Source: Trichoplax adhaerens
Taxonomy: Eukaryota; Animalia; Placozoa
Assembly (NCBI RefSeq): GCF_000150275.1
Contig: NW_002060943.1
Span: 4,546,008-4,610,007 of the forward strand
DNA: 64,000 nucleotides
Direction: 5' to 3'
Shown here piece after piece: positions 38,089 through 63,161 of this stretch. Position 1 is the stretch's first letter. Every line of letters starts with the position of its first letter. Below the pieces are notes generated by a model, which ran no database searches, was not told the origin of the DNA, and saw nothing but the letters and a program-made list of their open reading frames with translations. Position numbers and translations under genes: made by a program.

Positions 38089-38168
38089 TCGCTACTACTC
38101 TAAAGCGAGATTAAAATCCGGAATCTTCAGTTTTAATTGGTATCTCTGTTTCAGACAACGATTAAGCA

Positions 38169-41100
38169 ATGTCTGAAAATCATATTTTTGATGATTCTAT
38201 CAGGCCTGAATACTCGTATAGTCAGTATATGGCACCACAATTATACGTTACCATTCCTGAAGAATCGGTTAGCACTTCAGTAGAGCTTTACTTCAAAACT
38301 TGAATTATTATTTAAATAATTTATGAAAATGTCATATAATTCTACTCTTCAGCTGCTAATTGACATATTTGTAAAATGATATTCATTTCTTTTAAAGTTA
38401 AAGCCCACGTTTAAATTCGCCAAACATCTAGGAATTCGTCAAGAGGCGGATAAAAATCTTTCGGCAACGCTTCAGGTATAGACAATCAAGATCCAAATAC
38501 AATAATTAGCCCTACTTAGCACTGAAATTTAATCGCGAATATTCTAGGAAAATCAAATAATAATAGATCACATTTATCAATTTCTTTCAAAAAAGTTACA
38601 TAAAATACTGTAAAATCATTTTTTAAATTTATCAGCTAGTAAATTAATCAAAATACTTACATCTAAAATTTAACACTCAATGTCTACCACTATTTCTATC
38701 TCAACAGTATGAATTGATAGGCTTTTAAATCATAAATTGTGCTATATTTTTCAAATATAAGTAAATCTAGTTTACAATTTTATATGAAATTGCAAAAGTA
38801 TATTGTAGGTAAAGAAGACAACCTAAATTTATTTTTAAACTCGAATTAGATTCAAAATTGGCATGGCCCGGTTAAAATTTACACCATGCTGGCTGAGTCA
38901 TCTACAAGTTCATCTCCATTACCGCATTACAATATGCTTTGCCCTCTAATGAGGGAAAACATGCACACTTTTGACGAAAATGGTCAATTTCGTACTATAC
39001 TTCCAGGAGAAACTGTTAGCGTTATCATCAATTATTACAATGATGCCTCGACTTTAACGCACACGTATGATAATATATCGATATTTAAATCAAGTAAGCT
39101 TTCGAAGCGGTTAATTCTCTAATTTTTCGAATATTGTTACGTAGATTATCCGATCTTGTTGTGGTCAAGCAAGAAAAAGAGAACAAGGAAAATTCACTGA
39201 TTAAAAATTTAAGAACGTTCATGGAGGTTACACGTAAATTGCCATACAATATCCTTGAAGAGAATGTCTTCACTAGACCATGGAGCGTTGCTTCTGGTAA
39301 GGAATTAGTTGATCACAGTTAATATCTTTCTAATTCTACGTGGTATGATCGTTATATTTTTATAACCGTAAAACAACAGCAAAATCCTCAGTTCGTTTCG
39401 AAGTAAATCGAAATGTCAAAGATAATTGATCTGTGCTATTTCAAGCCTCGCACTTCAAAATGGTTGCGAGGATAATTTTATTAAAATAGATTTTTTGTTC
39501 ATTAGTTCTTGCATAACTTAATTAATTCAAGCAGACAAAATGACTAATAGATTGAACTAGCATTATGTAGGAGGCAGTTCAATCAATCAAAGCAAGATTA
39601 ATGATGTACTAATGTTGTGATTATGATGTATAGCTAAATTATATATTAGTAGCTCTCTTTGTTTATTTATATTGCAATATATTTGATTAAGGATTAATAC
39701 ATTTTTTAGTCGTTTAAGCATTATTTACTTATGCTTTTACAGGTACAATGCCGGAAGAATATGTTAATTGCATTGTCAAAAATGAACTCAAAAATTTAGA
39801 AGATGATAAAGCGAAATTAATGTTTTACGTGGAATTCTTAAATGAAAGAATTCAACTTGAACCTGCAACTACGATTATTTGCAGCCAAACATTTCAAGAT
39901 AGTAAGGCAATTACGTTTATCTGTAACTAGAAACGTTATTAATTATGCTATTTATTCTGACTTATTTTAAAATGTAGAACTCATTTTCGACGATTAATTA
40001 AATAAATAATAAAAATCAGCTATTACATAGGTAAATTGAAAACTCTAATCATCCACATTAATTCGCACAGGTAGTGTAAAATGGCGCTTAGCTCGAATCT
40101 CTCCTGATAATGGTCTGTCTACAAATTTCACAAAAGTGATGATTGCCCTTGAAGGAAAATTCAATATAGACAATAACAAACCAGAAGTATTTATAGTTGA
40201 TCCTGGTAAATATATTTTACCTGTTCTATTTATCGTGCGTAACTCACGCACCATGCATGCATACTCATAGAAAATTCTATTAAATCACTTCAAATGTCCC
40301 CTTTCTAGCTATTACTTTATTTCAGTAACATGATCTCAGTTTAGCTAGAGCACTGCAGTTACTTATAATACAGACCGCTTTTTGCATAATAACTAATTAT
40401 ATTATAATTAATTAGTTTATTACTTTCTCTAGCAACAGATTATGTTCTCAAGAAGATTCCTTTCGAACAAATTAATATCATTCATGAGGTAAAGCCAGAA
40501 ATTACTTTAAGTTACAAAATACGAGAATATTCAAATCGTGATATATAAATTGGCTATATTATCAATTAAGTAGACTTATTGATATTAACTTAAAAACTAC
40601 CGGTAATAATCGTAAAATTAAATTAAACTAAATCATTTTTAGATAATTAAAATACTTCTTAAAATTTTCGGATAGCTAACTTTCTCTTATTTTCATAGTC
40701 CGTTGAAATAATTACTTCATACCTGATTTTTATTGCATATTATTAGAATTGTATTACTATTATGATGCATCCACTTCATGATTCGATATTGCCCAAGCGA
40801 GTTTGGATTAAGCTACGGTCCACAAAAAATTTAACTTTAGAAAGTAATTACTTGCAATTTACCTACTTTGGATCGACAATGATCGATACTGAGAGATCTA
40901 CTATACAGCGTAAGTAGTAACATGCAAATCTGTTTACACTCCTTATCATTTTGAAACTGTATAAAAATAAAAGCTATAATATTCATAATAATGGAAAACA
41001 GCTACTAATTACTTGATGAATTGTATAAATAAATAATTCATAAAGTGCACGTAATTCGAAAATTTGAAAAGAAATTAAATTTAAATTAAAATCAGAATAA

Positions 41101-44100
41101 TAACCTACTTGACTAAACTTACGATTTCTATATCTTAGAATACATTTGGAACAGCGAAATTGGCCTGCCGCAATTTCATCAATTTTATGAAGCAAATCAG
41201 CATATGGATTATTCCTCTTCGAACGTGAGAATGATGAATAATTTCGGCAGTGATTCTAATAACAATTTCCAAAGTATGAGTGAAGATCCGAATCTTAGAT
41301 CAGGTACATACTCCAACTCAATATATTGTTAGCAGATCTAGCAACTTTATATGCTCTATTAGTCAATCATTAATAACCAAAGATAACTGGTATCTTTTTT
41401 ATCATCTTACATGATAACTGCAATTGCCAATAATTAATTTATTGCATTATACAATTATTTTCTCCATTAATCCAAACACAAGACGTTATATCTTTAATTT
41501 TCTTCATGCTCTGCATTAATTTATAACAATTACATTGCATTTTTCGATAACGATATCAACTTTAATACTGGTTCATAGTTCAACAAAAAATTAAAGACTT
41601 GAAAGTTAGTAAGTCACAGGATAAAGATAATAATTTTAACAGTGGCTCCGGCAGTGCATATCATTCCAGCCTTCACGGTAATTCAGGAAATCAATCTAAA
41701 GGTAAGTTGTAACCGTTCGTATTCTGATAGTTTTATTTGGAAATAGTTGGCAATAGTACTAGATTAAGATAAGTATCCTAGTATTTATGAAACCTTTGCT
41801 CTTCAGTATCTACTATCTTTCATACAATGAGCGATAATAATCCTGGCTATACGCGTAGCATTAATTAAATCTATTTTAAACTTTATATTAGTTCAAGATA
41901 GTATGAAAGATGAAAAAATGATTAATCAACAGCAAGAATCTGCCAATAAGGACAGTGCCTATGTAAGTGAATTCGATCCCACGACCTCATCAAACTGTTC
42001 AGTTGTTCAACCTGAAGGTACGTCATAAAAGTATTCTGCTATTTTCGTTACGAGTAGTAGTAACAAAATCTTTTTTAATCTGCATAATAGTTCGAGATGG
42101 AATGGAATACAAAAAAATAACTAATCTACAGAACAACTACAATAATGTTGACAGTGCCTATGGTAGTGAATGGGATCCCGCGGCCTCATTAAGCCATGCA
42201 GAAGTTCAGTCTAGAGGTAGGTCATAAATGTATTCTACTATTTTCATTAAGGAATTGTTAGGATCATTACTAAAATTGAATAGATTCTCTAGTATTTATG
42301 AAACTTTTGCATGGTAATCTCTACTATCTTTGCAGGCAAGCAGTATACCTCAAATCTTGAAGAAAGTAGCGCACGTGCCTTAGATTGTAGCACTGATAGC
42401 AGTAACGATATTAAAAGGTGCTCCAATACCAATCAGAAAAGTAATACCACATCGAAAATTCAAAGTGAGAAATTCCAGTCTTTCGATGACTAATAAGATC
42501 ATGAATTAATTAATTGCTATATATGTATTTTAAACCATCACATAGTACTAATTCATCTACTGTATTATTTAAGACGAAACGTATTCATTTCGATTATTTC
42601 ACTTTTGATAGCCTTGAATACGAACAAGTTTGTCAATCGGGAAAACATTTCACTGCGTCATATGGCTTTGCAACAGAGAAAGAGGACTTTCCTAAATGCG
42701 GCAATGTTACTAGATTTTGCAAAAACTAACGATATTGAGAAAATTATAACAGCTAATTTGCGTTATTGTGCCGTAAAAGATAAAAATGGCAATACGTAAG
42801 TACTTTAGCTAACTTGCATTATTAACGAACTATATAAGATCTTGGAGAATAAGCTATAGCTAATTTATTATCACTTTAAGAAAAACCGTAAATCCTCACT
42901 ATGCTGATTAATCTTGTCTTGCAGCAAGTATACAATGCTAACGAATTTATTTCTATAACAGCCCACTTCACATAGCTATTATAAATCATAATGAAGATTT
43001 AGCAATCCGCTTTATTCAATGCATGAAGAAACAACCAAATCTTTTCAACATACGAAATAACATCTACCAGGTATACGGCAGTTTCTAAATTTTAAATTAG
43101 TATGCATACTTAAAGGAAATGTACCAACTAATGGAATGGAATGTTATGGAATTGCTCATGCATCTGTCATCACCTTTAATAGACACCATTACATTTAGCG
43201 GCAAATATGGGCAAAAGTAAAATTGCTCTTCAGCTTGTCTGTGCTGGAGCCTGCGTATATTTGTGTGATCGTAATGGTGATACCCCTCTCCATATTGCAT
43301 GTCGGCGCGGAGAACTTGAATGTGTAAGAGTGTTGCTACAGCGAACCAAAAGCGAGCAAGGGAGAATAATTCTGTCCTATCCCGAATATGAAGAATATAA
43401 TCGCGGAGGTAAATAGTAGATTAATGATCGCATCAATAGTGATAGCTACAAATTGGATTAAAAGTTATAACTATTAGATACTCTAAGATGTCACCTTAAT
43501 AACCTAATATTTACAATATAGGGAATACACCACTTCATTTAGCTATAAAAAGCGGAAGTGCAGCAATTATTAAATTATTTCGTGACGAATATGGATTTAG
43601 GCTAAATATCAAGGTAGGTTGTAAAATTTCTATTAATTTTATGGTAAATCAAAAAATTGCTCATATTCGACATAAGCTAACATTAAGTAAATAAATTTTG
43701 TTATATTCTTTCAATGTAGGAAAAAAATTTCGGGAATTCACCATTGCATCTAGCTGTTATGTGTGATAGTAAGCCTATTGCCCAACAATTAATCAAGGTA
43801 AATTTATAGAGGATAATAAACAATGCATGAAGTTAATTATTAAAGAAATATTTCAACTTTCATTAGTACTTAATTTATTAATATTACTGTTCTTCTACGA
43901 TGGCAAGGCTGGGGCAGACGTTAACATAAAAAATTGCCGTGGAAACACTCCACTTCATGTTGCCTCATTTTTGAATTTGCAAGATATGATTTATTTGTTA
44001 ATTGAACATCATGCTGATGTCTCTATTGCTAACAACGAAATGGAGAAACCGATTAAGCTTTGTTCTGAAGACTTGGTAAGCGATTAGTTAAGTAGTTAAG

Positions 44101-44315
44101 TCATGGTTATACATGTGGAATATGTAAAGATGATCTATTCTAACAATTTAACATAATTAATTTGTAGTTTTTGCAGTACCTTTTCCAATATATTCACAAA
44201 CGCAATCATAATCCAGTAAACAATAACTAATAATTCTTTAAAATTTGTTTCTTTAATGCAGAGTGATGAACTTAGAATCTTAAATGAGCAATCAAACAGT
44301 ACGATGGTATTTTAA
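38169..44315 (+). CDS. NFKB: Divergent NF-kB p100/p105-like protein: degenerate RHD + IPT + Ser/Asn linker with degrons + 6 ankyrin repeats
   Basis: RHD exons: ..APQLYVTIPEES (38169-38267), LKPTFKFAKHLGIRQEADKNLSATLQ (38398-38475), IQNWHGPVKIYTML..PHYNML (cf. p50 ICNYVGPAKVIVQL..HAHSL), DKAKLMFYVEF..ICSQTFQDS. IPT: WRLARISPDNG..IIHENCITIMMHP..VWIKLRS..ESNYLQFTY. The p105-type pre-ankyrin helix AMLLDFAKTNDIEKII..AVKDKNGNT resembles ALFDYAVTGDVKML..AVQDENGD. Six (T/S)PLHxA ankyrin repeats lie at ~42790-44075. The last exon is uncertain (stop at 44230 or 44315). Confidence 0.85.
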
Positions 44316-49265: not shown

Positions 49266-52200
49266 ATGAACAACTTGCAGAATTTTGAAATATCCATAGT
49301 TAAAGAACCGTGGGTAAGTAATAAATTTTATTTTATAAGGTTACTTTTTTAATGTAACTGAAGCAATAGCAGCTTCTTGATAGTAAAGACAAGTACATCA
49401 GTGTAAAATAGATTTTTAAGGTGAATACTTACAACTCCATATTTTTATGAAATAAAGAAAGTTATTAACAATTGCAAAATATGACAACTCTGTTTTTCAT
49501 ATAAAATTCGCGTTATTTTTATCTACTATAGATTATCCAAAGACCACGCTATAGCACGGAAGTTGCAAATGCCACACATGGTCCCATTAAAGGCACGCCA
49601 ATTATCCAGGTACCACACATTATTTCTATTACATTATGTATGTTGTTATACTTTATTTGCTGTTTTACGGTAGAAGCAGTTCAAATTGTTGTAATTTTAA
49701 TATCAATTAGTGTGTTAAAGTCATAGTTTTCATTTCTACTACTATGTATTGCAACATATTCATAAAGATTTTTACTTAAGCTATCCTGATGGGCATGATC
49801 AAATTACATGATAATCTCTTTCGCTGGCTTATTTTAGTATCATGGTATACGAATTTTTTTGGATATTTCCCTGCTATAAATTTTAATTAAGTTAAAATAG
49901 CAAGAGGGAAAACAGAGGTGTGATTCCTTATCGTTTAGACAGATCTGACTAATCTATGCTGATACTGAGTCTTTTACTGAAATCAAAAGTGCAATCTTAA
50001 CGTGGGCCTTATTGAGGGCCTGAATTAGTCATCTAGCACATACAGTATAATAGTGCTCTCTGTCAAGACTGCAAAGCTATCTCTCTTCATTTTCAAAGTC
50101 AATAATATTTATACTCAAATAACATAAATACCTATCTTTATGCTCGTCCTATACATATGGTGAGCGAAATGCAAATCTTATCTGTACTCATGTAAAATTT
50201 TTCTACCTTATGGTAGTATATCGATTTACTTGACTCTGGAGCTGGTTATTAAAAATCTCCTGAAGCAATCAATGCAGCATATTTACGTACCTGGAATAGA
50301 TTGGATGAGAATCAGTATGCCTGAAATAATTCTACAGTTTACATTTGCTTATAAGAATCAAAAATATTAGTAAAATTTGCATCTATTCGACTCATTAAAT
50401 ACATAATTTCATTCTAAGTTCGCTACAGTACGTAACGTTTACCGTCTAGACCAATCAAGCTATCGAAATGAGATTTACGAACGACTTAAAATTATCCTAC
50501 TGCTAATTGATTTATTCTACTACTTAACTACATCGTCCCTTGCATACTAGGTAGAGCAGTTAGTGGTATTAGACTTCGGTTTATCACTCTAAGGTATTCT
50601 AAATTAGACTATTAATTGATTCGATGTGCTAAGATAAAACCTGCCCTAGATTCTCAAACTTACTAAATTTATGATAATCCTCAATCAATTGAATCCCACC
50701 CAACCACCAAAACGAGCAGCGCGGGGGTATTTATACTACTTTTAGCCGACTGTGATTATGGGTTCATTTCAATAAGTCAGTGTATAAGATTCTTACAGTA
50801 CTTTTTACCTCAAGATTTCTTCATATAAAACGAATAGCTCTAAGGTAGTAATTTCTGCTGAGTACTGATTTTTAAAATAGTATTCGTTATATCACTAAGG
50901 GTGACCACTGGGCCTTTCAATTCTGATTTGATGTAATATTCAGATGAAAATTGAATAAACATAGAATCTTTATAGAGTTTTCTACACGGCCATTTTGACT
51001 GTTACATTTTCTTATAACGGTTGTTATTGACAGAGCAAGCGATCCTTAGACACGTTATAATGATTGGTATAGAATTGACCACAGTACTAAGGACATTGTA
51101 CCGCACAGTAGATATCTTACAGTACCTGCTAATCTTAACTTGGTTTGTCCATCAACGGGCAGTACATTAATTATCATAATGTGCTTTGGACAATTAACTA
51201 ATCTTAATATAGCATTTCATCGGTGAAAGCATTATTGAAAAGTAGTATTCTGGAAGCATAACTGTGATATAGTAGTCCCTGGCTATTAACGGGATATACA
51301 TAATGTCGAATGGTAATACTATCTGTTAATTATTAACAAATGGGTACATTTTCGTAAACCGTCAGCAAAGCGACGTGAGTTTGTACTAGTTGTATATTAA
51401 AGGAGGAAATGCCTACAATCTCCCTTGATATTTTTTGTGCATATACGGCAATATGGGATATGATACAGTACAACATACGAATGAAATTGTGAGAACTCAG
51501 ACCTAAACGCGCAACCAACATGGTTTAACTATCAATTACGTCTATTTACTGCATACAGCTGTCACAGTACGAAGTACCGTAAAGAATTCTATGTCAAAAC
51601 TTAGTGAATTTTGCAATACATCAATAATATTCTAATCAGCATTATAGAGTTATCGGATGTTAATAAAATGTTGTCAAATTATGCAAAGTAAACTAGCAAA
51701 TGAGTGTTCAATCATAATATTACTACTCAGCAATGGTTAATATAATTTTAATCTGTCCAGTAGCATTATTCTTCACATTAGGATATGTACAGTGTAGAGC
51801 AGATATTATAATTGCCGAATTACTATCAAAGACTGTAATAAGGTTTCATCCGTGAATGTATTATTGAAAAGTAGTATTCTACAAAGTACAGTACTTTTGT
51901 ACAGCATACAGTACACGGATACACGGTAAAAAGTTACTGAACCTCTGACAGGTCTATCAAATGGTAATACTATCTGTTAAATGAGCACATTATCGTAAAC
52001 CGTCAGCAAAGCGACGGGAGTTTGCACTAGTGATTATAATTTTAACGATAAACAATTATATAATTATAGATGATAGTGTAAATGATTCTCTAATTGGATA
52101 TACTTTAGTCTAGTCATTTATAATTAGTTAATAGATATTCTGAACTATAAATTTCTCTGTCTTAATTTAGCTATTAAGCTAGATGTAACCGTTAGAATCT

Positions 52201-55200
52201 GTAGATGATTCATCATTGCTAGCTGCTACCGGAAGGTATATAAGCTCGGCAGATAGTTAAATAAAATCAGTTCTCTAGTTATTGAACTGTTATAGTGTTA
52301 AATACCGTATTACAGTGGAAATATCTATGTTAGGATAATTCTGTTAGACTATCCTTATTTAGTTAACTTCTAATTTGGATATACTATGTTTTAATATAGC
52401 ACTGACTTTTTATGACAGTGACACTTATACACATACTGAAATTAATAGTTATAATAGGGAATGCAAATCATCTACTTACAGTTCGAATCATTGTGATTGT
52501 AATTTACTTATGGTAGATTGTAAATTATCATGGAAATGTTCCGTGATAGGACATATCGTAATCTGACTATTCTGTATTAGTCATTACATGTCTATGTTGG
52601 TAAATACTGTTGTCTGCATTAAGGGAGCAGTAGCTAAACTTAATATCTAATTCAGTAAATGATTCCGAAGTTAATTGTATTAACTATGACTCATGAACTA
52701 TTGAGGAATAGTATATAAATGCAGTATATCGTGAATTAAAGTGGATTCTCAAACTTAGTGTTTAACGTAAAATACGAGGCGTTTAAGTCTTTGTGTAGTC
52801 TGCTAGTAGAGCAAAAGTACTTGTGATAATGCAGATATCGTTCCTTGATACGTGGCTCAAGGAGTTGACTTATTGATCGTATATTACGTTATCTTGTTGC
52901 AAAGCTGTTTTGTGACATGAACGCAGAAGCAAAGGCGCCTACTTTCTTATGAGTAGTTAAGGCATACTGAATCCCAGAGAATTTAGAAATTTTGAGATTT
53001 TTTTACATAATCCTTATTACGAAACAGCTTTGTGCCAACAGCGAACAGTAAAAATTCTACGAGAGACTAGCAATCTTAAATTAGAACCTAGATCAAAACT
53101 TATGGATTTATGTTGTACTCTATGATAAAGAAATATAGATTCTACTGTATTTTATAGTGAAAACTAGTAACAAATTTTATCATAATTGAAGTTTAAATTT
53201 AATTCTACTTAGAAACATTGGCTATTAAATTAGAATTTTAGAATGTACAGCACTTAACAAATATTTCACAATCAAACATTGCTATATCATAACCGGATGA
53301 GTAGTCAGATGCTATGATACTAAATTTACTGTAATCGAACTCATTTAGTTATTTTTAAAGCTATAATATTTACACGAAATGAAATCTGAAAGAAAAATTC
53401 TGAAAATTACCTTTAATTACACACGACAATTAAATCTACGTAATTGTGCTTGCGTTTAGATTTTACTTTCTAAATTCAGCTTAATCAATCTTTTATAATA
53501 GTTTCCGGGTTATAGGGGCCCTGTTGTCGTTTTAGCAATGGTATTGGCGAATGACAATGGGCCTCATCCCTATAAACTCATTACTATTGGCAGAGAAATT
53601 GACCAGTCCTATCATACGCTCAACAGGAATGGCGAAATAGTACCAATTTCTTCGGTTGATAAAAGCCCTATGCAAGTGGCTATTAAACAATTTGAAGTTA
53701 TTGAAAATTATGACTTCAGTTGCGGGTAATTTAAGCTATTTATATATTACTATCAATAGCTTTATTACGAATTAAGAATGATGTTTCAAACTTTCAATAC
53801 TACTACTTGAACAGATAGATTTTGCAGGTTTTGTACGGTATACTCGTATCAATAGTGGCAGATTTACAGCAGTTAGTTGATATCACGAAATAATTAATAA
53901 TTTCTAAAAACTTAAAATACAATAAGGCTTATTTTGTGTACAGAATCTTGTAATTTTACTTTCTCTACAAATGAGATGTATTAAGAATTATACTATATTT
54001 TTTGGAAATTCGATGCTGAGTTAATAAATTAAGCAATAAGTTCTTGAAATGCAATCAACTTAATGATTCATGTCTTTTCATACCTAGATTCCGTAGTATA
54101 GGCTTCATTCGAACCAGAAAGGATGAACTAGCAGAGAGTATAAGGGAGAAAACTATACTCCTATACCGTTATATTCTGCGCCAGGATCATTGGCAGTATC
54201 TGCCGGAACTTCAGTTTGGGCAGTCTAATTCTGAAATTAATGGTAAAATCGAAGCTGCAATTGAACTTGTCTTAAATTTTACTATATTGTTTCTGATATC
54301 TGATTGAACATTCTAGTAAAACTGGATTAATAAATAATTGCTAAGTCTGTTGCTTTGTATCCTGCACGTAGATGTACAATTGTTAGAAAATTTTATCAAA
54401 AAACGAACGGAGACTAATTCTCAAATCCATATATTTAAATTGGGTTTCTTTGCCTATCCTGGCCGTTTAGAGGATTTTAATAGTAATAGAGGTCCTCCAA
54501 AATTTATAGCAACAAAACCACTTATTCAAGAACGTATGTCAAGCTTATGATGAATAACTTAGATTCATATATTACCACGACCATAATATGCCCATTTTCA
54601 TATGAAGAAATTACTGACCTATGCATTTTCCACATGATTAACATGAAGATTTTAAATGCATCCACGTTAGGAAGTCCTCAACTTTTCATATGTGATATTT
54701 GTCCTGAATCTTGTCTAATGTCTCAAGGTTGCGAAATTATGATCACAGCTAACGATGCAAAAGGACTTGATATGGCCAATTATGATATCATTATTAACTA
54801 TCATCACGGTAATTAATATTAAAATTGATTTTTATAATTGCAATTGACATCTTGAAACCTCAAATCTGTAAACGCTAGATTTTGAGCTATTTATAATCAA
54901 CAAGAATCGTTTTATAAATTATATTATAAGCATTCGATTGCTACCTTCATGGTAATAAATAGAACTGCGAACAGATATCAGTACTGGTATATACCGAGAA
55001 TATCCGGTACCCTTAGGAAGAAGCGAAGCTAGAAGCTATGTTCAGTTCATTGCAGACGCGGTAATGTAACAGTATTGTCTGAGCCATTTTAGTTCTTTTA
55101 ATAATATTATTTTACTTTTTTCAAGTTTTTATCAGTTGATATTCCTTAAAGCTACCAGAATGGGCTTTGAAATAGTTATTGCTTCAATATATTAAGCTTG

Positions 55201-55454
55201 TGTTGCATTTACTTCAGCTAGTGCCATCCAATTCGACATTATGCTCATTTCTCTATAAAATTGTTAATCTTCAATTTTTCGATTTGATTAATCTTGCACA
55301 GCGCTGTCTAGTGTTTGAAATGCCTCCTTATATAAGTTATGATCAGAACCAAGTTCCTCAGTCATATCCAATTGAAGTAATGACGACAGTACATTTATCA
55401 CGAAAAGGTTCAAGAAATATCTCGGAAGGAAAAGAGTTTTACTACCGCAGTTGA
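49266..55454 (+). CDS. RHD-only Rel/NF-kB-family protein, paralog 1 (RHD-N + IPT, 8 exons)
   Basis: MNNLQNFEISIVKEPW (49266-49313), IIQRPRYSTEVANATHGPIKGTPIIQ (49532-49609), a 3.9-kb intron, then FPGYRGPVVVLAM..PHPYKL (from 53502), GFRSIGFIRTRKDELAESI (cf. p50 GFANLGILHVTKKKV), FKLGFFAY, SPQLFICDICPESC..GCEIMI and RCLVFEMPPY..VHLSRK..SEGKEFYYRS* (55454). Confidence 0.85.
51090..52032. repeat. Diverged direct duplication within the large intron of RHD paralog 1
   Basis: ATTATTGAAAAGTAGTATTCT, AATGGTAATACTATCTGTTAA and CGTAAACCGTCAGCAAAGCGACG.GAGTTTG.ACTAGT occur at ~51215-51390 and ~51845-52032. Confidence 0.85.
52280..52913 (+). repeat. Dispersed non-coding repeat, copy 1 (possible non-autonomous element)
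   Basis: Colinear with 62670-63161 (AGTGGAAATATCTATGTTAGGATAA, TGGAAATGTTCCGTGATAG, TTATTGATCGTA, TTGTTGCAAAGCTG). This copy has ~150 extra bp. Confidence 0.85.
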
Positions 55455-58400
55455 TTGCGAGATCATACGTGCAAGAATGCAAGGTCGGTTATTTGTACCA
55501 TCAGTAGGTTATATGTTATTATTGATTAAATTAATTTAAACTAATTGATTAATGCTAAAAGATAATAAATTGCATTATTTTTGCAGTACTTAGTATCGTA
55601 AATGATATTACAACTTAAAAGCGAAAGTATTGTAAATTATCAGAAGTAATGAATCTAATTTCCATGAATAACGTAGGCACGCATATAGAAGAAAAATCTT
55701 TTCCAAATCGACTCCACAAATGCTTACAATTATTATTTCAGGCTCACGCTACAGTATTGCATTATTAGATCATCGGTTTATTACTTCTCAAATGGTGCCG
55801 GAATCGAAAATTTTTTATTATGAACTATTGTCTACGGCTATCATTTATATACTATATACCATTAACCATTTCTTACATTATCTGTGACTGATTTTTATCC
55901 ATTTAACTATAGTATAACACCGCAGCTTTATCAAAGTCATTATTTAAATTGATTATGAATCCATGCGTTAACAATACAGAGCCTGTATGTACATTAGGTA
56001 AACCCCATAAGTTAAGTATGAATTCGATTGACTGACCTCTTATAAATAATGGAACAAATTGGAACCATGACTTGAATGCTACCGTCGATTTTATATTTAA
56101 ACCATATTGTTTGGAACAAAAACATTATCGTAGTAATGGTAGTATGAAACGATATGAAATCTTGTAGACATAAAGCAACGTCTTTATTTGACTATTTCAA
56201 ATATTTAGATAGCCTTCTATCACTGTTACACATAAAAACTAAATGAAATGTATACTATTAGCACGATTTGAAATAAAATACAAGATTCCCATAAATTGCT
56301 ATGCCGCTGTGAACGAACATTGTGCAAAGCGCAGTGATATTCTCATTTGGAACAGTTTCAATTATATAATTATTTAAAAAACCTATATAGGTCAACACCA
56401 GCTGCCTTAATTCATAAGAAATATCTGCTAATGTTAGCGTATAAGTTGGCTCTATTTTTATTTGTTTATCAAATTATATTAAGAATACAATGAACTTTAT
56501 GTATACAGATTGAAGGATAGTGATCTTGCCAGCGGACTGGATAGTATAGTAAAATTCTGTTGACTATAGCCATGAAATATAGTTAGTCATCTATAAAATT
56601 GCTTTGAAATAATCGTTTTTATGTCAACCTTAAAGCAATAGGATAGGATAACTAGCAACTACTGCTGCTACTAACCTGAAATTGAGCGCTTCTTAATGAA
56701 TAGCGAAATTGTTGATAGAACTATTTTGACGTATGTAATTTAGAATTTTGGGTACTAGCTACTTATTCTTTGCACAATGGTAAGATAAAGATGTAAAGAC
56801 GTTAAATTGAAATGATAATACTTTTACTTATTGTGCGTTTTGATAAGATTAGGTTGGCTTTAACGTAATTTTGAGCAATCGGGTTTGCATTTTGTCGACA
56901 ATACAATTCATTGTAGCACATTGCACTAAGTACAGTATTTTATAATTGCAACGTACTTATTTCGCAATTCTTGTAGCATAACGTCATGCTTAGAAGGAGT
57001 CGATACCATAAACCATAGAATAGTACACCACGATAGTACTATTATTTATTTGTATTTATAATACGCGTATTACTTTGTTGATCAATCAATCTATTAATCA
57101 AGAATTCCAATAATCTTATATACCTCACTATCAGTCATTCTTGTTAACTCCGTATGCAAATTAAGCTAATAAACCTTTAGTTACCTTCTCACTGAGTACT
57201 ATTCATTTATGCCACCTGCTCAAGAAGAGAAAATAACGATATTACATGTACGATTTGAATTGAGCACCAACCGCACCGGCATCTTATTACGCCACGTACC
57301 TTAAAATTTCTCAATAGTAATTCAATATTGTACGCTATCAGCAAACAACTATAACTTATCTCTAATTTAAAGTACACTACAAACGTATATTTATTAATAG
57401 AATTCAATAATGTAGAGAACAATAACTACAACTGACGGCCAATTATCGTTATTTACCAATAAAATAAATTTTAGACCCTACCATAGTTATATCAATATTT
57501 AAACTGGGATATTTATTAATAATTATGGGGAAATGATGTATGCTTAAATAAAATAATATTCAGAGCTTAAAAAATCAAGCACTCATTCATTACTCATTTA
57601 ATAATATTAAATCCTTTCTGCTGTCACAATTTGTTGGTTAGAAAAATAACTAGCTTAATAATATGTAATGATTTCAGCTAATTGTAGGAGTACAGTATAC
57701 GAACGATGTAAAGGTTATGTTGCTAAATTTACTGAGTGTGCACTACAAGTTTAGTGGTAGGTTATCAAAGGAGGAGCGAATGCTCAGCTCCTTAGTTCGT
57801 GATTGGATAGCCTTTCGGCTACTCCATTGATAAAGCTATACTAAACTCTTAGAACAGTCTTATCCTTATATGACCATAAGCAGTATAGGACTACCACAAT
57901 GTAGACCTCCAGGTGTAGTGGAGATAGGAATAAGTAATCTATTAGTTTAGGGTAGTAGTTTGCAAGTTACGTTTGAGACAGTTATATACTACATAACGTA
58001 GAAAAGCACAATTCGTAGTCAAATTATAATTTTTATTAATTTACAGTTAGTAATGTTGGGAATCTATGGTACAAATTATTTGATCATATATGTTTAGTTG
58101 CTAGTTTCATTTAGGATACTTTAGAATAGGAATTTGATAGTCTGATACCAGCGATTATTTTAGATGGTATGTAAAAGTTGGCGTAGTTCAAGTTTCAGTT
58201 CCAGCTAGCAATTATTAAGAAGCTCAAGTTAGTAGCAGTAATTTTTTTGGATCTTTTGGTTGGTTGAGGTAGCAATTCTGACCTTACTATTATTCATTTA
58301 ATTGAAATACTAAGGTATTTGATAAAATTTAAATAAGCTGTTATTTCCCCCTGATTTAGTTATAATTATTTCGAGTAATTGTTTATTTACTAGGTTTTTG

Positions 58401-58668
58401 TTTTATCTTAGTAATTGAAATTTATTTAATGTATACGTATAAAATTTATCGTATGCATGGAATAGTATAGTAGTTATCAGAGCCACTTTGGGGGGGGGGC
58501 AACTAAATGCACCTTTATTGAGAGTATAAAGGTTTTCGACGTGAAGGGTGAGGCTCATTTTCGTTGGCATGAGGCGCAGAGATAGAAGTACTAATCTAGT
58601 ATAACATGATCTCTACAGTACCCTAAACTCTATGTTTAGAAATCTTGTCAGAAACATTTCTTCATAAA

Positions 58669-61600
58669 ATGAATTCTAAGCAACCTATTTCGGTGATTAT
58701 TATCAAGGAACCCGGGGTAAGTTTTCCATAGCATACTAAATCATATTAAAACTAAGGAACATTTCGAATCGGTGTTGTCAGCTGGTCTCCACTACATAGG
58801 TAGCAAATTAGCCACAAGCCGCAGTTCTCTGAATACTTCGTCAATAAATATTCCTCAACCTATTATAGAATGAAACCATTTTGTTTTACATTAGTTCTTA
58901 ATGTGAATGAATAACTCATAAACTGATAATAGAGCGTGCGTCTATCTTATTTTGAGTTATTCCGCGAAGATTTTTCATTTCAGTTTTAAAGCTGTACTTT
59001 TAATCTTAACGCCGTTTTGAGTATTATAAACGAATGGTAGCTCATATATCAACGGTTAAGTTCTAAGGTATTGAAGGTAGAAATATTATATTTGTACAAA
59101 AAAATTTTATCGTGATCAATTGTTATAGCTTATAGTTCCAATTAGTCTTGAATGGAACGATACTGCAATTAGGCTGACTATCTTATATAATTTATACTAA
59201 ATTTTATTATCCGTCGCATTGCTGGCGGACTGCAGCTTACAACATTACGTATAATTTGTTTTAATATTTTTACTACTAGACTATTCAAAGGCCACGCTAT
59301 TGGTTAGAAATTAAACGCACCACACACGGTCCAATGAGAGATCCGCCAATACTCCGGGTACGCTGCATCATTTTGCCAAACGTTCTAAATCGAATTATGT
59401 ATAGCAGTAACATACTATGTCCATATTTCATAAAAGATTGCCCATCGAGCTATCGCAGTATCAATCGAATTTCTATACCGTTACTCTGTATTAGAAGCTT
59501 AACTTAGTCCAGTATAATTGGTGAATTAAAGTCATACAATTTCTGCTTTTTAAGTTTTCGTAAATTGTTATTGTAGTTGTTCTCATTAGCAATTTGTCAA
59601 ACTGCGGTGAGAACTTTCTCTATTTTACTTGTATCATTTTTGGAAATAATATCGTTCAATACCTTAATTATGACTTAATAGAGAAGTAGTCTCAGTTATA
59701 CAAAATGTAAGTATTTGTTATTGCTTGATTAGATTATAAGTATATCAAGCCTTTATTATGTACGCTGCCACTAATAATCACATCGAATAAGATTTTATAG
59801 GTAATACGCTACTATCCCTCCGTGTATTTGCCAGTGATACTATTTCATTAGAATATTTACTACGCCTCATTGATTGTGCCAATTATTGCAAAAAGACAAA
59901 ATTTCAAAAATATTCCTACACATTTTGAAGAATGAATCCAATTCTACTATTAGATCACAGATGGTACAGTTAGAATTGATGGTTTAACTTTTGCCTTATT
60001 AGCTCTTCTAATAGTTTTCAAATTATAGGGGTCCTGCTGTCGTTATTGCTATGCCTATAGCGAGTACAGAGGAGAGATTTCCTTCGCCCCATCCTAATAA
60101 ACTTATTGTTGTTGGTGGCCTAGAAAATGACCAAAGCGTTTTCACCTTAAATGAGGACGGCCGGATGATGCCAATAACTTCTAATTCCAAGGCTCCTGTA
60201 CATGCTCTTATTAGACAATTTGAAGTGGATGGAAATCATAATATCGATTACGAGTAATTAAAATTAGCCTATATATATATGCATGTGATATATACCAATC
60301 ACGAATTTCCAATTTTTAGAAAAATAAGGGCTTTATTGAATCTTATACAAAGATTAACTACACAGCTCTACTCTAGCCGAATACTACTTCTAAAGACTTC
60401 TACAACGAACTAACAGAATAATCTAAAGTTGCATGCTTTTATACTTTTCGTAGCATTCGCAGCTACAATCCGCATGGCAACCTTTTACCTTATTTTACAC
60501 ATAGTTAAATTATTCTTAGTAAGACTATTCTACTGCGGACCATCATTAATCTAATATATGACTTACAGCTCTATTTTTACCTACAGCCATATTAGTAACT
60601 CAACAGCTTACTGTATATAGTCATCTGTGCTCTAGCATAGAGTCTCTACCACTACAGTCTATAGTTACAGCTACCAAATATCTCTTAGGATAAATATCTA
60701 CCGTACATTATACTACACATGGCTAACAGTCTACAATCACAATACTAAGTTACATTACAATGCAGCATCAACAGAAATGAATAAGGGTACTAAGTATTAA
60801 GAATACTCTTTTGCGAATAGATCAATTACGAGTTTTAGGTGATCATATCAATGATTAGAGATTGCACTATCGAGGCGATACTTATAGCCTATTATTATTT
60901 TCATAAATTTTCGAAAAAATTGAATTTTGTTCAGATTGACCTACTGACATTTCCTTCTACACTTTCTCTCAAACTAATACATATTTATATTCACGTTTTC
61001 TTATAAAATTGACTTTATTACGAAGCCCTAACAATAAAAAAAGCTAATTATGCATCTTTCCAATGCTAGATTCGGTAACATAGCTTTCGTTCGAATCCAT
61101 TCAAGGAAACCTAAAAATCATGATGAGAAGTGGCTGCCAGATAGTATCGCAGAAAAGACCAATTTACTATCTAAGTTCATTTTAGGTATCGGGTTAAGAC
61201 CATATCTGGAATCAAAATTTATGGTGGTCAATCCTGAAATTAGTGGTAATTACAAAACCGTGTTCAATTTTATATCCTCAATTTTAACAAATAAATTACA
61301 TTACTATACTCGAAAGTCTACCTAAATAATTAAACTAATTTAGTAGAGTAAATAACTGATAAACATATCGTTTATTCAATCTCCTGCTTATAGATGATGA
61401 ATTATTAAAAAATTTTGTTGTGAGGCAAACCGGTAACGAGAACGATATGCAATACCAAAAATTTAGATTGTGTTTCTTTGTCTATCCTGGCCGTATAGAG
61501 GAATTTTATTCCATCAGACATCTTTTGAGTTATATAAAAACAAAACCTTTAATACGAAATGGTATGAAAAGCTTATTTTAAAACTTAGATTATGATAGCA

Positions 61601-62449
61601 GCAATATTTCTATGTAATGTGACTATTTATTAAAATATATCTTATTAATATGATCAACATCGACATACAAAATGACTTACTGATAGACAGTCCCCGATTT
61701 GTCATAAACGATATTTGTCCCAATACCGGTCTTATATCTAAAAGCTGCGAAGTTATGATCACAATAAAAGAGTTGATAGGACTTGATATTGGGCCGTACG
61801 ATATTATGATTAAGTATATTTCAGGTAATTAATATTCGTATTGATTTTATGCTAATTTTATTAACATCTTAATATTTCAAGATACAAAGAGCTAATAATG
61901 CTTATTGATCTATAAATGGAAATCATTTCATAAATTATGTTTTTGCCGATTGATTACTGATTTCAAGATGATATTAATAAATAGAAGAGCGACAACTTGA
62001 TAATATACCTCAAGAATTTAAAATCGATATAGAACATATTATTACATGGCAAGATTCGTCAATTCAGTCGATACCTGACGCGGTAACGTAATGTTTAGTA
62101 CTGCCTGCACTACTGTTTTGTTATCTCAGAATTTTTTTGCTTTTGATTAAATAAATAATCCTTGTCTCTGCGAATATGACATTTATAATCCTTTTTGCTT
62201 TAATATTTCAAATCTATTTTCGTGAACTTTCATTGATATTATCGAGTTTGATATCATCTCAACTTTGCTTAATCCACTATTCCTGAATAGGGCTGTTTAA
62301 TATTTCGAATGCCAATTTATGAATGCTCTTCTGATTCGTGGGGGAATTCTTTACCAGAACTAAAAAAAGTAAGGGCTAAGGTACATTTAGCACAAAGAGG
62401 TAGCAAAATTACATCGAATGAAGTAGATTTTTACTACACAAGCGAATAA
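58669..62449 (+). CDS. RHD-only Rel/NF-kB-family protein, paralog 2 (RHD-N + IPT, 8 exons)
   Basis: MNSKQPISVIIIKEPG (58669-58716), TIQRPRYWLEIKRTTHGPMRDPPILR (59280-59357), FSNYRGPAVVIAM..PHPNKL, FGNIAFVRI, KFRLCFFVY, SPRFVINDICPNTG..SCEVMI and GCLIFRMPIY..VHLAQR..SNEVDFYYTSE* (62291-62449). Exon phases match paralog 1. Confidence 0.85.
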
Positions 62450-62669: not shown

Positions 62670-63161
62670 TTAATTATCATTCTGTTATTTTGTTATACAC
62701 TGTATTATCGAGATTAGAGTGGAAATATCTATGTTAGGATAACTTTGTTTATAACTTACTTATGGTAGATTGTAGATTATCGTGGAAATGTTCCGTGATA
62801 GTATATATTGTAATCTGATTATTTGCATTAGTCGTTAGATATCTATGTTCATAAATACTGTTGCTTTCATTAGGTAGCAGTAGTTAAAATTTGTCTTTGA
62901 TTTATTGGAAGGCTTCAAAGTTAATATTACGAACTAGAATGCCTGAAATATTGTAGAAGAGTATTAAATGCAGTATACCGTATAATAAAATTAATTCTTA
63001 AGGTTAGTGTTTGATATAAAATGCAAGGTGTTTAGGTCTTTATGTTGTCTGCTGTAGAGGGAAAGTGTTCACGATTGAATAGATATTGCTCGCTAATACG
63101 TGGTTCAGGGAATCGACTTATTGATCGTACGCTAAGTTATTTTGTTGCAAAGCTGCTTTGT
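62670..63161 (+). repeat. Dispersed non-coding repeat, copy 2
   Basis: Same orientation as, and colinear with, 52280-52913. Confidence 0.85.

What the first reader, a model, noticed from the sequence alone, without database searches (positions are those of the whole stretch)
38169..62449. Tandem three-gene Rel/NF-kB cluster with apparent inhibitor/effector division of labour
Seen: three co-oriented RHD genes share an 8-exon RHD layout. Exon 2 is exactly 78 nt in all three, the phases match, and they share a private insert, so they arose by local duplication. Gene 1 keeps the IPT dimerisation domain, ankyrins and degrons but has lost its DNA-contact residues. Genes 2 and 3 keep the DNA-contact loop but lack everything C-terminal to IPT. 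Inference: an ancestral p100/p105-like gene was partitioned into a degradable IkB-like chaperone or inhibitor and two minimal DNA-binding subunits, independently of the vertebrate and Nematostella arrangements. From memory, placozoans have often been described as lacking recognisable NF-kB. High divergence and tiny exons would explain a miss, but both the taxon and that literature need checking.
Basis: partly seen in the sequence, partly recalled or inferred. Interest (0 to 1): 0.92.

Follow-up and report, generated by a model that had tools for sequence, protein, structure and literature searches.

The report
Placozoan tandem Rel/NF-kB gene cluster
This stretch of the Trichoplax adhaerens genome holds a real, already published cluster of very divergent NF-kB-type genes: one p100-like gene with ankyrin repeats and an exact p100 degradation motif, followed by short genes that encode only the Rel homology domain (RHD).

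Summary
The window is Trichoplax adhaerens.

- **Gene 1** (38169-44315, +) is one spliced mRNA of 20 coding exons and 878 aa. Its order is derived RHD, IPT dimerisation domain, S/N-rich linker, then p100-type ankyrin domain.
- **Genes 2 and 3** (49266-55454 and 58669-62449, +) are 8-exon genes that encode only the RHD.
- **Shared layout.** All three have a 78-nt exon 2 and intron phases 0,0,2,1,1,1,0.
- **DNA-recognition loop.** Genes 2 and 3 read RPRYxxE. Gene 1 reads TFKFAKH.
- **Degrons.** Two tandem-duplicated exons of gene 1 carry DSAYVS and DSAYGS. The second is the exact human p100 degron, but it lies before the ankyrins, as in IkB.
- **Dimer test.** A gene 1-gene 3 IPT dimer passed the complex test (0.77 against a best control of 0.00).

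The cluster is not new. Kamm et al. 2019 described a p100-like gene plus two RHD genes 3' of it in Trichoplax sp. H2. Those two are the orthologues of gene 3 and of a fourth, more canonical RHD gene about 5 kb past the window. Gene 2 is missing from their list. It is intact, strongly conserved and probably transcribed.

The inhibitor/effector division of labour is plausible but untested. AlphaFold2 models failed, and no tree against Rel, NF-kB and NFAT could be built.

The parts
38169..44315 (+). Gene 1: p100-like NF-kB gene with 20 coding exons and 878 aa. Exons: 38169-38267, 38398-38475, 38850-39064, 39145-39296, 39743-39901, 40071-40205, 40433-40488, 40747-40909, 41139-41303, 41579-41701, 41892-42017, 42091-42216, 42336-42464, 42612-42795, 42962-43070, 43183-43408, 43522-43613, 43720-43797, 43908-44075, 44262-44315.
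   Evidence: Spliced RNA contigs from 4 runs in 4 studies. GT..AG at every joint. Reading frame and phases. The orthologue P0003 has the same length.
38169..39901 (+). Gene 1 exons 1-5: derived N-terminal (DNA-binding type) domain of the RHD.
   Evidence: A profile of genes 2, 3 and 4 only scores 35.6-37.6 bits, E about 1e-9, against a best of 5000 shuffles of 10.7 bits. The nearest ESM Atlas clusters all carry RHD_DNA_bind/RHD_dimer, score 0.93.
38407..38427 (+). Gene 1 recognition-loop equivalent, TFKFAKH. This position holds RFRYKCE in p65 and RPRYxxE in genes 2 and 3. The last residue is Y in Trichoplax sp. H2.
   Evidence: Ungapped register of the 78-nt exon 2 and the HMM alignment. p65 alignment. 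H1/H2 difference at codon 43.
40071..40909 (+). Gene 1 exons 6-8: IPT/dimerisation domain, about aa 235-345.
   Evidence: Family alignment. ESMFold2 folds aa 233-353 with pLDDT 81-82 and places it in a dimer with the gene 3 IPT.
41139..42464 (+). Gene 1 exons 9-13: S/N/Q-rich linker without a glycine-rich region. Every exon is phase 1-1.
   Evidence: Composition S 40, N 31, Q 20 of 247 residues. Phases.
41892..42216 (+). Tandem-duplicated 126-nt exons 11 and 12. Each carries a DSAYxS motif: DSAYVS at 41951-41968 and DSAYGS at 42150-42167. DSMKDE lies at 41897-41914.
   Evidence: 93 of 129 aligned nt are identical, against a shuffle maximum of 75. Motif coordinates. Human p100 degron 865-DSAYGS-870 (PMC6027159).
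42612..44075 (+). Gene 1 exons 14-19: ankyrin-repeat domain, about aa 630-845.
   Evidence: Pfam Ank E=7e-39 with 6 stretches. Exon-level hits. The best single collinear match in the PDB is the human p100 ankyrin domain 4ot9 (107 bits), followed by IkB-beta, Bcl-3 and IkB-alpha. AlphaFold2 pLDDT 70-88 here.
49266..55454 (+). Gene 2 (TRIADDRAFT_51763): RHD-only gene with 8 exons and 351 aa. Exons: 49266-49313, 49532-49609, 53502-53725, 54088-54242, 54372-54533, 54671-54808, 54963-55060, 55302-55454. Loop RPRYSTE at 49541-49561.
   Evidence: Paralogy with gene 3. Database model P0002 covers exons 3-8. AG/GT at all sites. 2 synonymous and 0 non-synonymous differences from H2. RNA runs hold 0.30-0.42 of the words of 53400-55500, where exons make up 0.45.
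58669..62449 (+). Gene 3 (TRIADDRAFT_51764, UniProt B3RKU0 'RHD domain-containing protein'): RHD-only gene with 8 exons and 367 aa. Exons: 58669-58716, 59280-59357, 60015-60253, 61070-61245, 61394-61561, 61687-61824, 61985-62082, 62291-62449. Loop RPRYWLE at 59289-59309.
   Evidence: Database models P0001 and P0006 mapped on the window. Splice sites. Nearest ESM Atlas clusters are RHD, score 0.93.
52363..52918 (.). Copy of a dispersed repeat of about 555 bp inside intron 2 of gene 2. Not part of the gene. It explains part of the 3.9-kb intron.
   Evidence: 661 first-look candidates in the genome. 40 were scored, nearly all at 96-97% identity. A second copy lies at about 62738-63164.

Best explanation
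What it is (about 0.9 sure). A placozoan tandem array of highly derived Rel/NF-kB family genes made by local duplication.
- Gene 1 is a p100-type protein: derived RHD, IPT dimerisation domain, low-complexity linker with two DSAYxS motifs, then about seven ankyrin repeats. It has no glycine-rich region and no death domain.
- Genes 2 and 3 are RHD-only proteins, and so is a fourth gene just outside the window.

How it most likely works (inferred, about 0.4 sure).
- Gene 1 dimerises through its IPT domain with itself and with the RHD-only paralogues.
- Its ankyrin domain holds these dimers inactive.
- Phosphorylation of the DSAYxS motifs by IKK recruits beta-TrCP, and the proteasome removes or processes gene 1, which frees DNA-binding dimers.
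- Base-specific DNA contacts would come mainly from genes 2, 3 and 4. Gene 1 has replaced all four canonical contact residues of the recognition loop (R, R, Y, E changed to T, K, F, H).
For: Shown:
- One transcript joins the RHD and the ankyrins.
- Exon 2 size and seven intron phases are shared.
- Homology chain: Pfam RHD_DNA_bind to gene 4, 51 bits. Profile of genes 1-3 to gene 4, 40.1 bits, E=1.4e-10. Profile of genes 2-4 to gene 1, 35.6 bits, E=3.6e-9. Shuffles reach at most 12.8 bits.
- An exon-3 profile found only these genes and one distant relative among 1.8 billion proteins.
- The family profile hits only Rel/NF-kB chains in the PDB, with p65 at 9e-4.
- ESM Atlas neighbours are all RHD.
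- The ankyrin domain is closest, as one collinear stretch, to human p100.
- An exact DSAYGS is present and is the p100 degron.
- A beta-TrCP D-domain gene is in the genome. Kamm et al. report most downstream TLR-pathway effectors but no IkB-alpha orthologue.
- IPT-IPT complex of genes 1 and 3: score 0.77, best of 3 controls 0.00. That mark was reached by 51 of 78 solved complexes and 2 of 108 mismatched pairs. Partner pLDDT at least 83, and contacts agree in at least 93% across runs.
- Gene 2 is under clear purifying selection: its exons differ from H2 at 0.2%, the flanks at about 1.5%, Fisher p=4.6e-5.
Against: - No experiment or read-level evidence bears on binding, localisation, phosphorylation or co-expression.
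- The complex pass may only reflect memory of solved RHD dimers, and it cannot tell which family members pair.
- Degrons are called from motifs alone. They lie between the RHD and the ankyrins, unlike p100 and p105.
- No basic nuclear localisation signal follows the RHD in genes 1-3, so masking of such a signal cannot be the mechanism.
- K, F and H in the gene 1 loop might still contact DNA. Contact residues outside that loop could not be aligned with confidence.
- The ratio of non-synonymous to synonymous change against Trichoplax sp. H2 is near 1 for genes 1, 3 and 4 (0.8, 0.9, 1.5). Counts are small.
- AlphaFold2 gave pLDDT about 40 for the RHD parts.
- Splicing of genes 2, 3 and 4 rests on annotation and paralogy. 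For gene 2 there is also an indirect word-share argument.
Confidence: 0.5

Rival explanations
1. Conventional p100-type NF-kB. Gene 1 is itself the main DNA-binding NF-kB. Its ankyrins auto-inhibit it, processing frees a p52-like product that binds DNA with an altered loop, and genes 2-4 are extra lineage-specific subunits. There is no inhibitor/effector split.
For: The domain order resembles that of sponge, Capsaspora and anthozoan NF-kB, which behave this way (review PMC13042239). The RHD of gene 1 keeps an intact frame over 8 exons and is expressed. K and F are conservative replacements for R and Y.
Against: All four canonical loop contacts are changed, and the position equivalent to E differs even between H1 and H2 (H versus Y). 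2 of the 13 amino-acid differences fall in the 26-aa loop exon. There is no glycine-rich stop signal for partial processing. The degrons lie upstream of the ankyrins.
Confidence: 0.3
2. Genes 2 and 3 are decaying or neutrally drifting duplicates, or small dominant-negative decoys, and not DNA-binding effectors.
For: Gene 3 shows 7 non-synonymous against 2 synonymous differences from H2, one of them inside the loop (L25K). Neither gene has a transactivation domain or a nuclear localisation signal. Gene 2 is not annotated in H2.
Against: Both frames are intact in H1 and H2, and all splice sites are canonical. Gene 2 has 0 non-synonymous changes, and its exons are about 8-fold more conserved than the flanks. 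RNA runs hold a word share that fits exon-only coverage. An orthologue of the gene 2/3 type with collinear exons 3-5 exists in a much more distant AT-rich organism.
Confidence: 0.12
3. Genes 2 and 3 are NFAT-type rather than Rel/NF-kB-type RHD proteins.
For: The T in RPRYSTE recalls the NFAT loop (from memory). NFATc clusters appear among the structural neighbours at TM 0.46-0.53, alongside NF-kB and Rel.
Against: Searches of the PDB with gene 4 and with the family profile return only Rel/NF-kB chains, even at E up to 10. Genes 2 and 3 share derived exon features with gene 1, which carries p100-type ankyrins and the p100 degron.
Confidence: 0.04
4. The N-terminal halves are not RHDs at all but an unrelated immunoglobulin-like family.
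For: Pfam does not reach threshold on genes 1-3. The best value is 12.2 bits for gene 3. AlphaFold2 models are unreliable.
Against: A transitive profile chain leads to a Pfam-positive RHD. PDB hits are RHD only. ESM Atlas neighbours are all RHD. Kamm et al. 2019 obtained the same result with HHpred.
Confidence: 0.02

Closest known systems
Human NF-kB2 p100 (and p105)
   Same: Order RHD, then IPT, then ankyrin domain. The ankyrin domain is the best single collinear PDB match (4ot9). The hexapeptide DSAYGS is identical to the IKK-alpha/beta-TrCP degron of p100. p100 also acts as an inhibitor of other Rel subunits (PMC2199059 abstract).
   Different: No glycine-rich region and no death domain. 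The degrons lie between the RHD and the ankyrins, not after the ankyrins, and there are two copies in duplicated exons. The recognition loop is degenerate. No basic nuclear localisation signal follows the RHD.
Trichoplax sp. H2 TrispH2_003408, _003409 and _003410 (Kamm et al. 2019)
   Same: Direct orthologues of gene 1, gene 3 and the out-of-window gene 4. That paper already reports a derived RHD and IPT by HHpred, ankyrin repeats, no death domain and three clustered members.
   Different: That paper does not list gene 2. It also does not report the exon and phase structure, the loop residues, the DSAYGS motifs or any functional model. The 003410 model has 199 aa and no recognisable IPT part.
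IkB-alpha-type inhibitors
   Same: A degron upstream of an ankyrin domain of 6-7 repeats. IkB-alpha, IkB-beta and Bcl-3 are strong collinear matches. DSMKDE in gene 1 also occurs right after the IkB-alpha degron (the string DSGLDSMKD is found in 10 papers). This may be coincidence.
   Different: Gene 1 is fused to an RHD and an IPT domain. The motif is the p100 variant (DSAYGS), not DSGxxS.
RHD-only NF-kB proteins of the choanoflagellate Acanthoeca spectabilis and of hydrozoan and scyphozoan cnidarians; Nematostella NF-kB with a separate IkB gene
   Same: Proteins made of an RHD with little else, several per genome in A. spectabilis, and an RHD function separated from an ankyrin function (PMC13042239).
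   Different: Here the RHD-only genes are tandem paralogues of the ankyrin-bearing gene and share its derived exon 2 and insert. They end directly after the IPT domain, without a nuclear localisation signal or a glycine-rich region.

Membership tests
Rel/NF-kB family (Rel homology domain) | N-terminal RHD recognised by Pfam PF00554 above threshold | tested here: inconclusive
   The gene 4 orthologue scores 51.2 bits and covers positions 2-169 of 169. Gene 3 scores 12.2 bits, below the 27-bit cut-off, and genes 1 and 2 get no hit. Genes 1-3 are linked to gene 4 by profiles at E=1e-9 to 1e-10.
Rel/NF-kB family (Rel homology domain) | Recognition loop R-x-R-Y-x-C-E | tested here: inconclusive
   Genes 2 and 3 keep R, R, Y and E (RPRYSTE, RPRYWLE). 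Gene 4 has GFRYESE. Gene 1 has TFKFAKH and so fails.
Rel/NF-kB family (Rel homology domain) | IPT-type dimerisation domain that forms RHD-style dimers | tested here: inconclusive
   Pfam RHD_dimer gives no hit. The family profile aligns to the LKICRV...EIFLLC segment of p65. ESM Atlas neighbours carry RHD_dimer. The predicted gene 1/gene 3 dimer scores 0.77 against a best control of 0.00. This is a prediction only.
Rel/NF-kB family (Rel homology domain) | Basic nuclear localisation signal at the C-terminal end of the RHD | tested here: not met
   Genes 2 and 3 stop 2-3 residues after FYY. Gene 1 has no K/R cluster until RKR at aa 598-600.
NF-kB subfamily (p100/p105 type) | C-terminal ankyrin-repeat domain on the same polypeptide | tested here: met
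   Single spliced transcript. Pfam Ank E=7e-39. Collinear match to the p100 ankyrin domain.
NF-kB subfamily (p100/p105 type) | Glycine-rich region between the RHD and the ankyrins | tested here: not met
   The linker, aa 354-600, is S/N/Q-rich, and G is not among its 8 commonest residues. This agrees with PMC13042239.
NF-kB subfamily (p100/p105 type) | C-terminal death domain | tested here: not met
   Pfam finds no Death family at E up to 1 on P0003. Only 17 residues follow the last ankyrin exon. Kamm et al. report the same.
NF-kB subfamily (p100/p105 type) | beta-TrCP phosphodegron that responds to IKK | tested here: inconclusive
   The sequences DSAYGS and DSAYVS are present, and the first is identical to p100 residues 865-870. 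A beta-TrCP gene is present. Position differs from p100. Phosphorylation and binding cannot be tested with these tools.
NFAT family | RHD closer to NFAT than to Rel/NF-kB, with an N-terminal calcineurin-regulated region | tested here: not met
   No NFAT chain appears among PDB hits at E up to 10. Only 16 residues precede exon 2 in genes 2 and 3. No tree could be built.

The most novel reading that the evidence does not exclude
Placozoans built their own two-tier NF-kB system by tandem duplication. One part is a p100/IkB hybrid that has lost base-specific DNA contacts and works only as a signal-degradable partner and inhibitor. Its degron sits upstream of the ankyrins as in IkB, but with the p100 sequence. 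The other part is three RHD-only paralogues that do the DNA binding. This would be a split of the Rel and IkB roles that arose independently of vertebrates and of Nematostella.
Probability: 0.3. Interest if true: 0.75.

Novelty: new variant of a known kind. Interest (0 to 1): 0.5.

Why it matters
Placozoan NF-kB is the least understood among early-branching animals. The 2026 review from the Gilmore laboratory calls it 'purported'. It leaves it out of its alignments because the RHD boundaries could not be set, and it does not mention the neighbouring RHD-only genes.

This work supplies:
- exact domain boundaries, taken from an RNA-supported 20-exon model and from paralogue and exon comparison;
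- a fourth cluster member that the published account does not list;
- the exact p100 degron, in duplicate;
- a clear contrast in the recognition loop between the ankyrin-bearing gene and its short paralogues.

These turn a vague 'derived NF-kB' into a hypothesis that can be tested directly with the cell-culture assays already used for sponge, cnidarian and protist NF-kB.

If the hypothesis is confirmed, the split between Rel-like effectors and IkB-like inhibitors arose more than once. It would also show that a p100-type protein can survive as a pure regulator. If it is not confirmed, the locus is still a corrected annotation of a known gene cluster.

Tried and rejected
- **Pfam exon by exon** found only ankyrin repeats.
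- **Six-frame scans of the genome** with PF00554 and PF16179 found nothing. Their control genomes were silent too, so these blanks are uninformative.
- **AlphaFold2 with 4-row alignments** gave mean pLDDT 40 for gene 3 and 40 for gene 1. Only the ankyrins were confident. I therefore ran no fold search, because the matches would be meaningless.
- **All three homologous-protein searches** (P0001; the A3 profile; P0004 at E up to 10) returned only the query itself. No canonical NF-kB, Rel or NFAT sequences could be obtained. As a result there is no profile-profile comparison with canonical RHDs and no phylogeny.
- **Genes 2 and 3 alone against the PDB** gave one hit, the RHD protein Gambif1, at a non-significant E=0.78.
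- **My reading of IPT-like open frames downstream of gene 4** (L008 6812-6940, 7283-7405, 7501-7638) is not supported by Pfam or by the profile of genes 1-3. Whether gene 4 has an IPT domain stays open.
- **Rejected readings:** pseudogene for gene 2, NFAT for genes 2 and 3, and 'not an RHD'. The reasons are under the rival explanations.
- **Earlier findings:** The search of earlier findings held nothing for this place.
- **Spliced models:** Those tools received single exons by reference or the database proteins P0001-P0006. Joined models of genes 1-4 existed only inside local scripts, for translation, phases, the comparison with Trichoplax sp. H2 and one local hmmsearch. That hmmsearch was repeated with the database protein P0003. 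The full 351-aa gene 2 model was therefore never searched as one piece.


Full report
**1. Taxon and setting**

The window is G000:C1414:4546008-4610007 of a genome of 105.63 Mb in 1414 contigs. Proteins encoded here are TRIADDRAFT_51763 and TRIADDRAFT_51764 of Trichoplax adhaerens. Their nearest relatives come from Trichoplax sp. H2. GC content is about 0.30 throughout. Upstream neighbours are ordinary: a PLA2G12 gene, a 60KD_IMP/OXA1-like gene and a DEP-domain gene.

**2. Gene 1**

I laid contigs of four RNA data sets from four studies on 38130-44120. Each held one spliced contig of 3.1-3.3 kb that runs through every exon from the 5' end to 44075 and beyond. After the stated cut shifts, every joint is GT..AG. 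The three joints with 'letters between' resolve into strain SNPs next to canonical sites. The loose end after 44075 continues at 44262.

It has 20 coding exons, ends at 44315 and gives 878 aa. RDD44621 of Trichoplax sp. H2, named 'NF-kappa-B p100 subunit', has the same length and differs at 13 residues. The refuter 'RHD and ankyrin halves are separate transcripts' is therefore excluded.

**3. Genes 2 and 3**

These genes are collinear paralogues in every exon. I mapped the database models P0001, P0002 and P0006 and added the missed exons 1 and 2 of gene 2. This gives two 8-exon genes of 351 and 367 aa with AG/GT at all sites.

| Gene | Exon sizes (nt) |
|---|---|
| 2 | 48, 78, 224, 155, 162, 138, 98, 153 |
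| 3 | 48, 78, 239, 176, 168, 138, 98, 159 |
| 1 (first eight) | 99, 78, 215, 152, 159, 135, 56, 163 |

Intron phases are 0,0,2,1,1,1,0 in all three genes. Gene 4 has a 114-nt exon 2 flanked by the same two phase-0 introns. The 78-nt exon is thus a derived character that joins genes 1-3. So is the longer segment between the PHxxxL and (K/R)LxF motifs: 122-138 aa, against 83 aa in gene 4 and about 73 aa in p65.

**4. Are they Rel homology domains?**

Direct Pfam evidence is weak. No single exon hits. Full-length gene 3 reaches only 12.2 bits, and genes 1 and 2 get nothing outside the ankyrins.

The chain through gene 4 is strong:
- An exon-3 profile of genes 1-3, run against 1.84 billion proteins, found five proteins. 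Three are the query genes themselves or their Trichoplax sp. H2 orthologues. The fourth is a 79-aa fragment. The fifth is TrispH2_003410 at E=1.9e-5.
- TrispH2_003410 matches Pfam RHD_DNA_bind over its whole length at E=1.9e-13. It also matches p65, c-Rel, p100 and p105 in the PDB.
- In local tests with database proteins, a profile of genes 1-3 scores 40.1 bits on gene 4.
- A profile of genes 2-4 that leaves gene 1 out scores 35.6 bits on the first 360 residues of gene 1. The best of 5000 shuffles reached 12.8 and 10.6 bits (also with my RNA-based model).
- The four-gene profile hits 20 PDB sequences at E up to 1, and all of them are Rel/NF-kB.
- The ESM Atlas places both gene 1 (aa 1-360) and gene 3 next to clusters that carry RHD_DNA_bind and RHD_dimer. 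The score is 0.93, with 205-212 of 256 features shared. Structural neighbours are NF-kB p110, c-Rel, RelB and NFATc.
- Kamm et al. 2019 reached the same conclusion with HHpred.

My own AlphaFold2 runs on 4-row alignments failed for the RHD parts. I have no fold evidence of my own.

**5. A fourth gene, and only this cluster**

The orthologue of TrispH2_003410 lies at C1414:4615119-4616735 on the + strand. That is window-equivalent 69112-70728, about 5 kb past the window end. A six-frame scan of the whole genome with the family profile returned 12 matches, all between C1414:4584408 and 4615965. As far as this scan can see, the family is confined to one array of four co-oriented genes.

[quoted passage not shown] These are the orthologues of genes 1, 3 and 4. 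In the H2 record no gene is called in the 10 kb upstream of 003409, so gene 2 is absent from the published account.

Gene 2 is nevertheless the best-conserved member:
- It shows 2 synonymous and 0 non-synonymous differences between H1 and H2.
- Its exons differ at 0.2% and the surrounding DNA at about 1.5% (Fisher p=4.6e-5).
- RNA runs hold 0.30-0.42 of the sampled words of 53400-55500, where exons make up 0.45. Three other runs hold all the words. This fits spliced transcripts but is indirect.
- A contig from an unidentified AT-rich sample (Logan SRR30664517) carries collinear exons 3-5 of a gene 2/3-type gene at about 26-36% protein identity. The subfamily is therefore older than the H1/H2 split.

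**6. Residues and motifs**

Exon 2 has no length differences among genes 1-3, so the loop register is fixed.

| Protein | Loop |
|---|---|
| p65 | RFRYKCE |
| Gene 2 | RPRYSTE |
| Gene 3 | RPRYWLE |
| Gene 4 | GFRYESE |
| Gene 1 | TFKFAKH |

The gene 1 and genes 2/3 loops come. The last residue of the gene 1 loop is Y in H2. In gene 1, 2 of the 13 H1/H2 amino-acid differences fall in this 26-residue exon.

The claim that these are the base-contacting residues of NF-kB rests on established structural knowledge of p50 and p65, not on a test here. Contacts outside this loop could not be aligned with confidence.

Genes 2 and 3 end 2-3 residues after the FYY motif. No basic cluster follows the RHD of gene 1.

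The gene 1 linker (aa 354-600) is S/N/Q-rich and not glycine-rich. It is built from phase 1-1 exons. Exons 11 and 12 are tandem duplicates: 93 of 129 nt are identical, against a shuffle maximum of 75. They carry DSAYVS (aa 469-474) and DSAYGS (aa 511-516). DSAYGS is the sequence at residues 865-870 of human p100 that IKK1 phosphorylates and SCF-beta-TrCP recognises (PMC6027159). A beta-TrCP D-domain gene is present in the genome.

The ankyrin domain matches human p100 (4ot9) as one collinear stretch of 250 residues at 107 bits. IkB-beta, Bcl-3 and IkB-alpha follow. Higher total scores in the list belong to proteins with many repeats that match in several stretches. A degron upstream of the ankyrins is the IkB arrangement. 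The motif sequence is the p100 one.

**7. Mechanism**

I tested the likeliest contact, the IPT domain of gene 1 (aa 233-353) with the IPT domain of gene 3 (aa 235-367).
- Score 0.77 (median of three runs), best of three controls 0.00.
- That mark was reached by 51 of 78 solved complexes and 2 of 108 mismatched pairs.
- Partner pLDDT is at least 83, and the runs agree in at least 93% of contacts.
- The interface uses gene 1 residues 242-246, 256-263 and 296-302, and the matching segments of gene 3.
- From memory, these are the three elements used in solved RHD dimers.

The tool warns that a pass for a family with solved complexes shows likeness. It does not show that these copies bind, and it cannot tell which members pair.

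My working model has three steps:
1. Gene 1 dimerises with itself and with the short paralogues.
2. Its ankyrins inhibit these dimers.
3. Proteolysis driven by IKK and beta-TrCP through the DSAYxS motifs releases them.

I give the identity of the locus about 0.9. I give this mechanism about 0.4, and the stronger claim that gene 1 is blind to DNA about 0.3.

Points against the model:
- No nuclear localisation signal is present to be masked.
- There is no stop signal for partial processing.
- The ratio of non-synonymous to synonymous change is near 1 for genes 1, 3 and 4 (0.82, 0.93, 1.49; 17, 9 and 6 differences).
- There are no data on co-expression.

**8. Comparison with the literature, and novelty**

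Already published:
- the existence of the p100-like gene;
- its derived RHD and IPT;
- the missing death domain;
- two RHD genes 3' of it (Kamm et al. 2019);
- an AlphaFold2 model of the H1 gene (Romanova and Moroz 2025).

Glass et al. 2026 class the protein as RHD plus ankyrins without a glycine-rich region. They exclude it from alignments because its RHD boundaries are unclear.

I found the following points in none of these papers, nor in searches by gene identifier:
- gene 2 as a cluster member;
- the shared exon and phase structure;
- the loop contrast;
- the duplicated DSAYxS exons;
- the predicted heterodimer;
- the inhibitor/effector hypothesis.

The library does not cover subscription journals, so priority cannot be excluded. 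I rate the finding as a new variant of a known kind, on a locus whose existence is already known.

**9. What was not done**

- There is no phylogeny against NF-kB, Rel and NFAT, and no profile-profile comparison with canonical RHDs. No canonical sequence could be fetched.
- There is no read-level check of genes 2-4.

Noticed in passing
L008:5112-6731 (window-equivalent 69112-70731), + strand: Fourth co-oriented RHD gene, the orthologue of TrispH2_003410. It is the most canonical member (Pfam RHD_DNA_bind E=1.9e-13 for the H2 protein). Its exon 2 is 114 nt. The H2 model stops at 199 aa, and a GTAAT donor at about L008 6714 suggests the gene may continue. The downstream IPT-like frames were not confirmed by Pfam or by the family profile.
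   Followed up: partly
window 38334-38630; L010 (C1410:4476500-4482800): In RNA contigs of three runs (three studies, two organism labels) this single-copy stretch is flanked on both sides by sequence from another scaffold. The stretch holds exon 2 of gene 1 plus the adjoining intron. The flanks map to C1410:4480770-4480799 and 4478544-4478573, same strand and order, 2.2 kb apart. There is no assembly gap and no copy of the stretch there. There are no GT/AG sites at the joints, only a 21-nt and a 6-nt microhomology. Depth is about 10, against 74 for the main transcript. Trans-splicing, template switching or a structural variant could explain it, and none was resolved.
   Followed up: partly
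window 52363-52918 and about 62738-63164: Copies of a dispersed repeat of about 555 bp, with hundreds of copies genome-wide at 96-97% identity (661 first-look candidates). It looks like a young non-autonomous mobile element. One copy lies in intron 2 of gene 2 and one downstream of gene 3. The T. adhaerens v1 model of gene 3 (P0001) takes its false last exon (62769-62795) from inside the second copy.
   Followed up: partly
window 59241-60280: Divergence between T. adhaerens and Trichoplax sp. H2 is 3.3% here (34 mismatches in 1040 nt), against 0.5-1.5% in the flanking blocks. The stretch covers exons 2-3 of gene 3, including its recognition loop (L25K, T30S). It is bordered by indels of about 445-480 bp.
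   Followed up: no
window 63979-64440 (into L008): The H2 locus matches 64003-64440 in reverse orientation (94%) next to a forward match that starts at 63979. This is a small inversion or an inverted duplication between the two strains.
   Followed up: no
L011 and L012 (Logan SRR30664517 and SRR30664516): AT-rich genomic contigs (GC 0.30) from unidentified samples. They carry collinear exons 3-5 of a gene 2/3-type RHD gene at about 26-36% protein identity. They probably come from a distant placozoan lineage, but the organism was not checked.
   Followed up: partly
window 41321-41533: A 213-nt contig at depth 7 in run X5 lies wholly inside intron 9 of gene 1. It is unspliced pre-mRNA, a retained intron or DNA carry-over.
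   Followed up: no
window 24025-24342 (-), 31762-32118 (+), 36038-36355 (+): Ordinary neighbours by Pfam: a DEP domain (E=8.8e-11), a 60KD_IMP/OXA1-like domain (E=2.1e-5, below the cut-off) and the group XII secreted phospholipase A2 family PLA2G12 (E=1.9e-21). The PLA2G12 gene lies directly upstream of gene 1 in H2 as well.
   Followed up: partly
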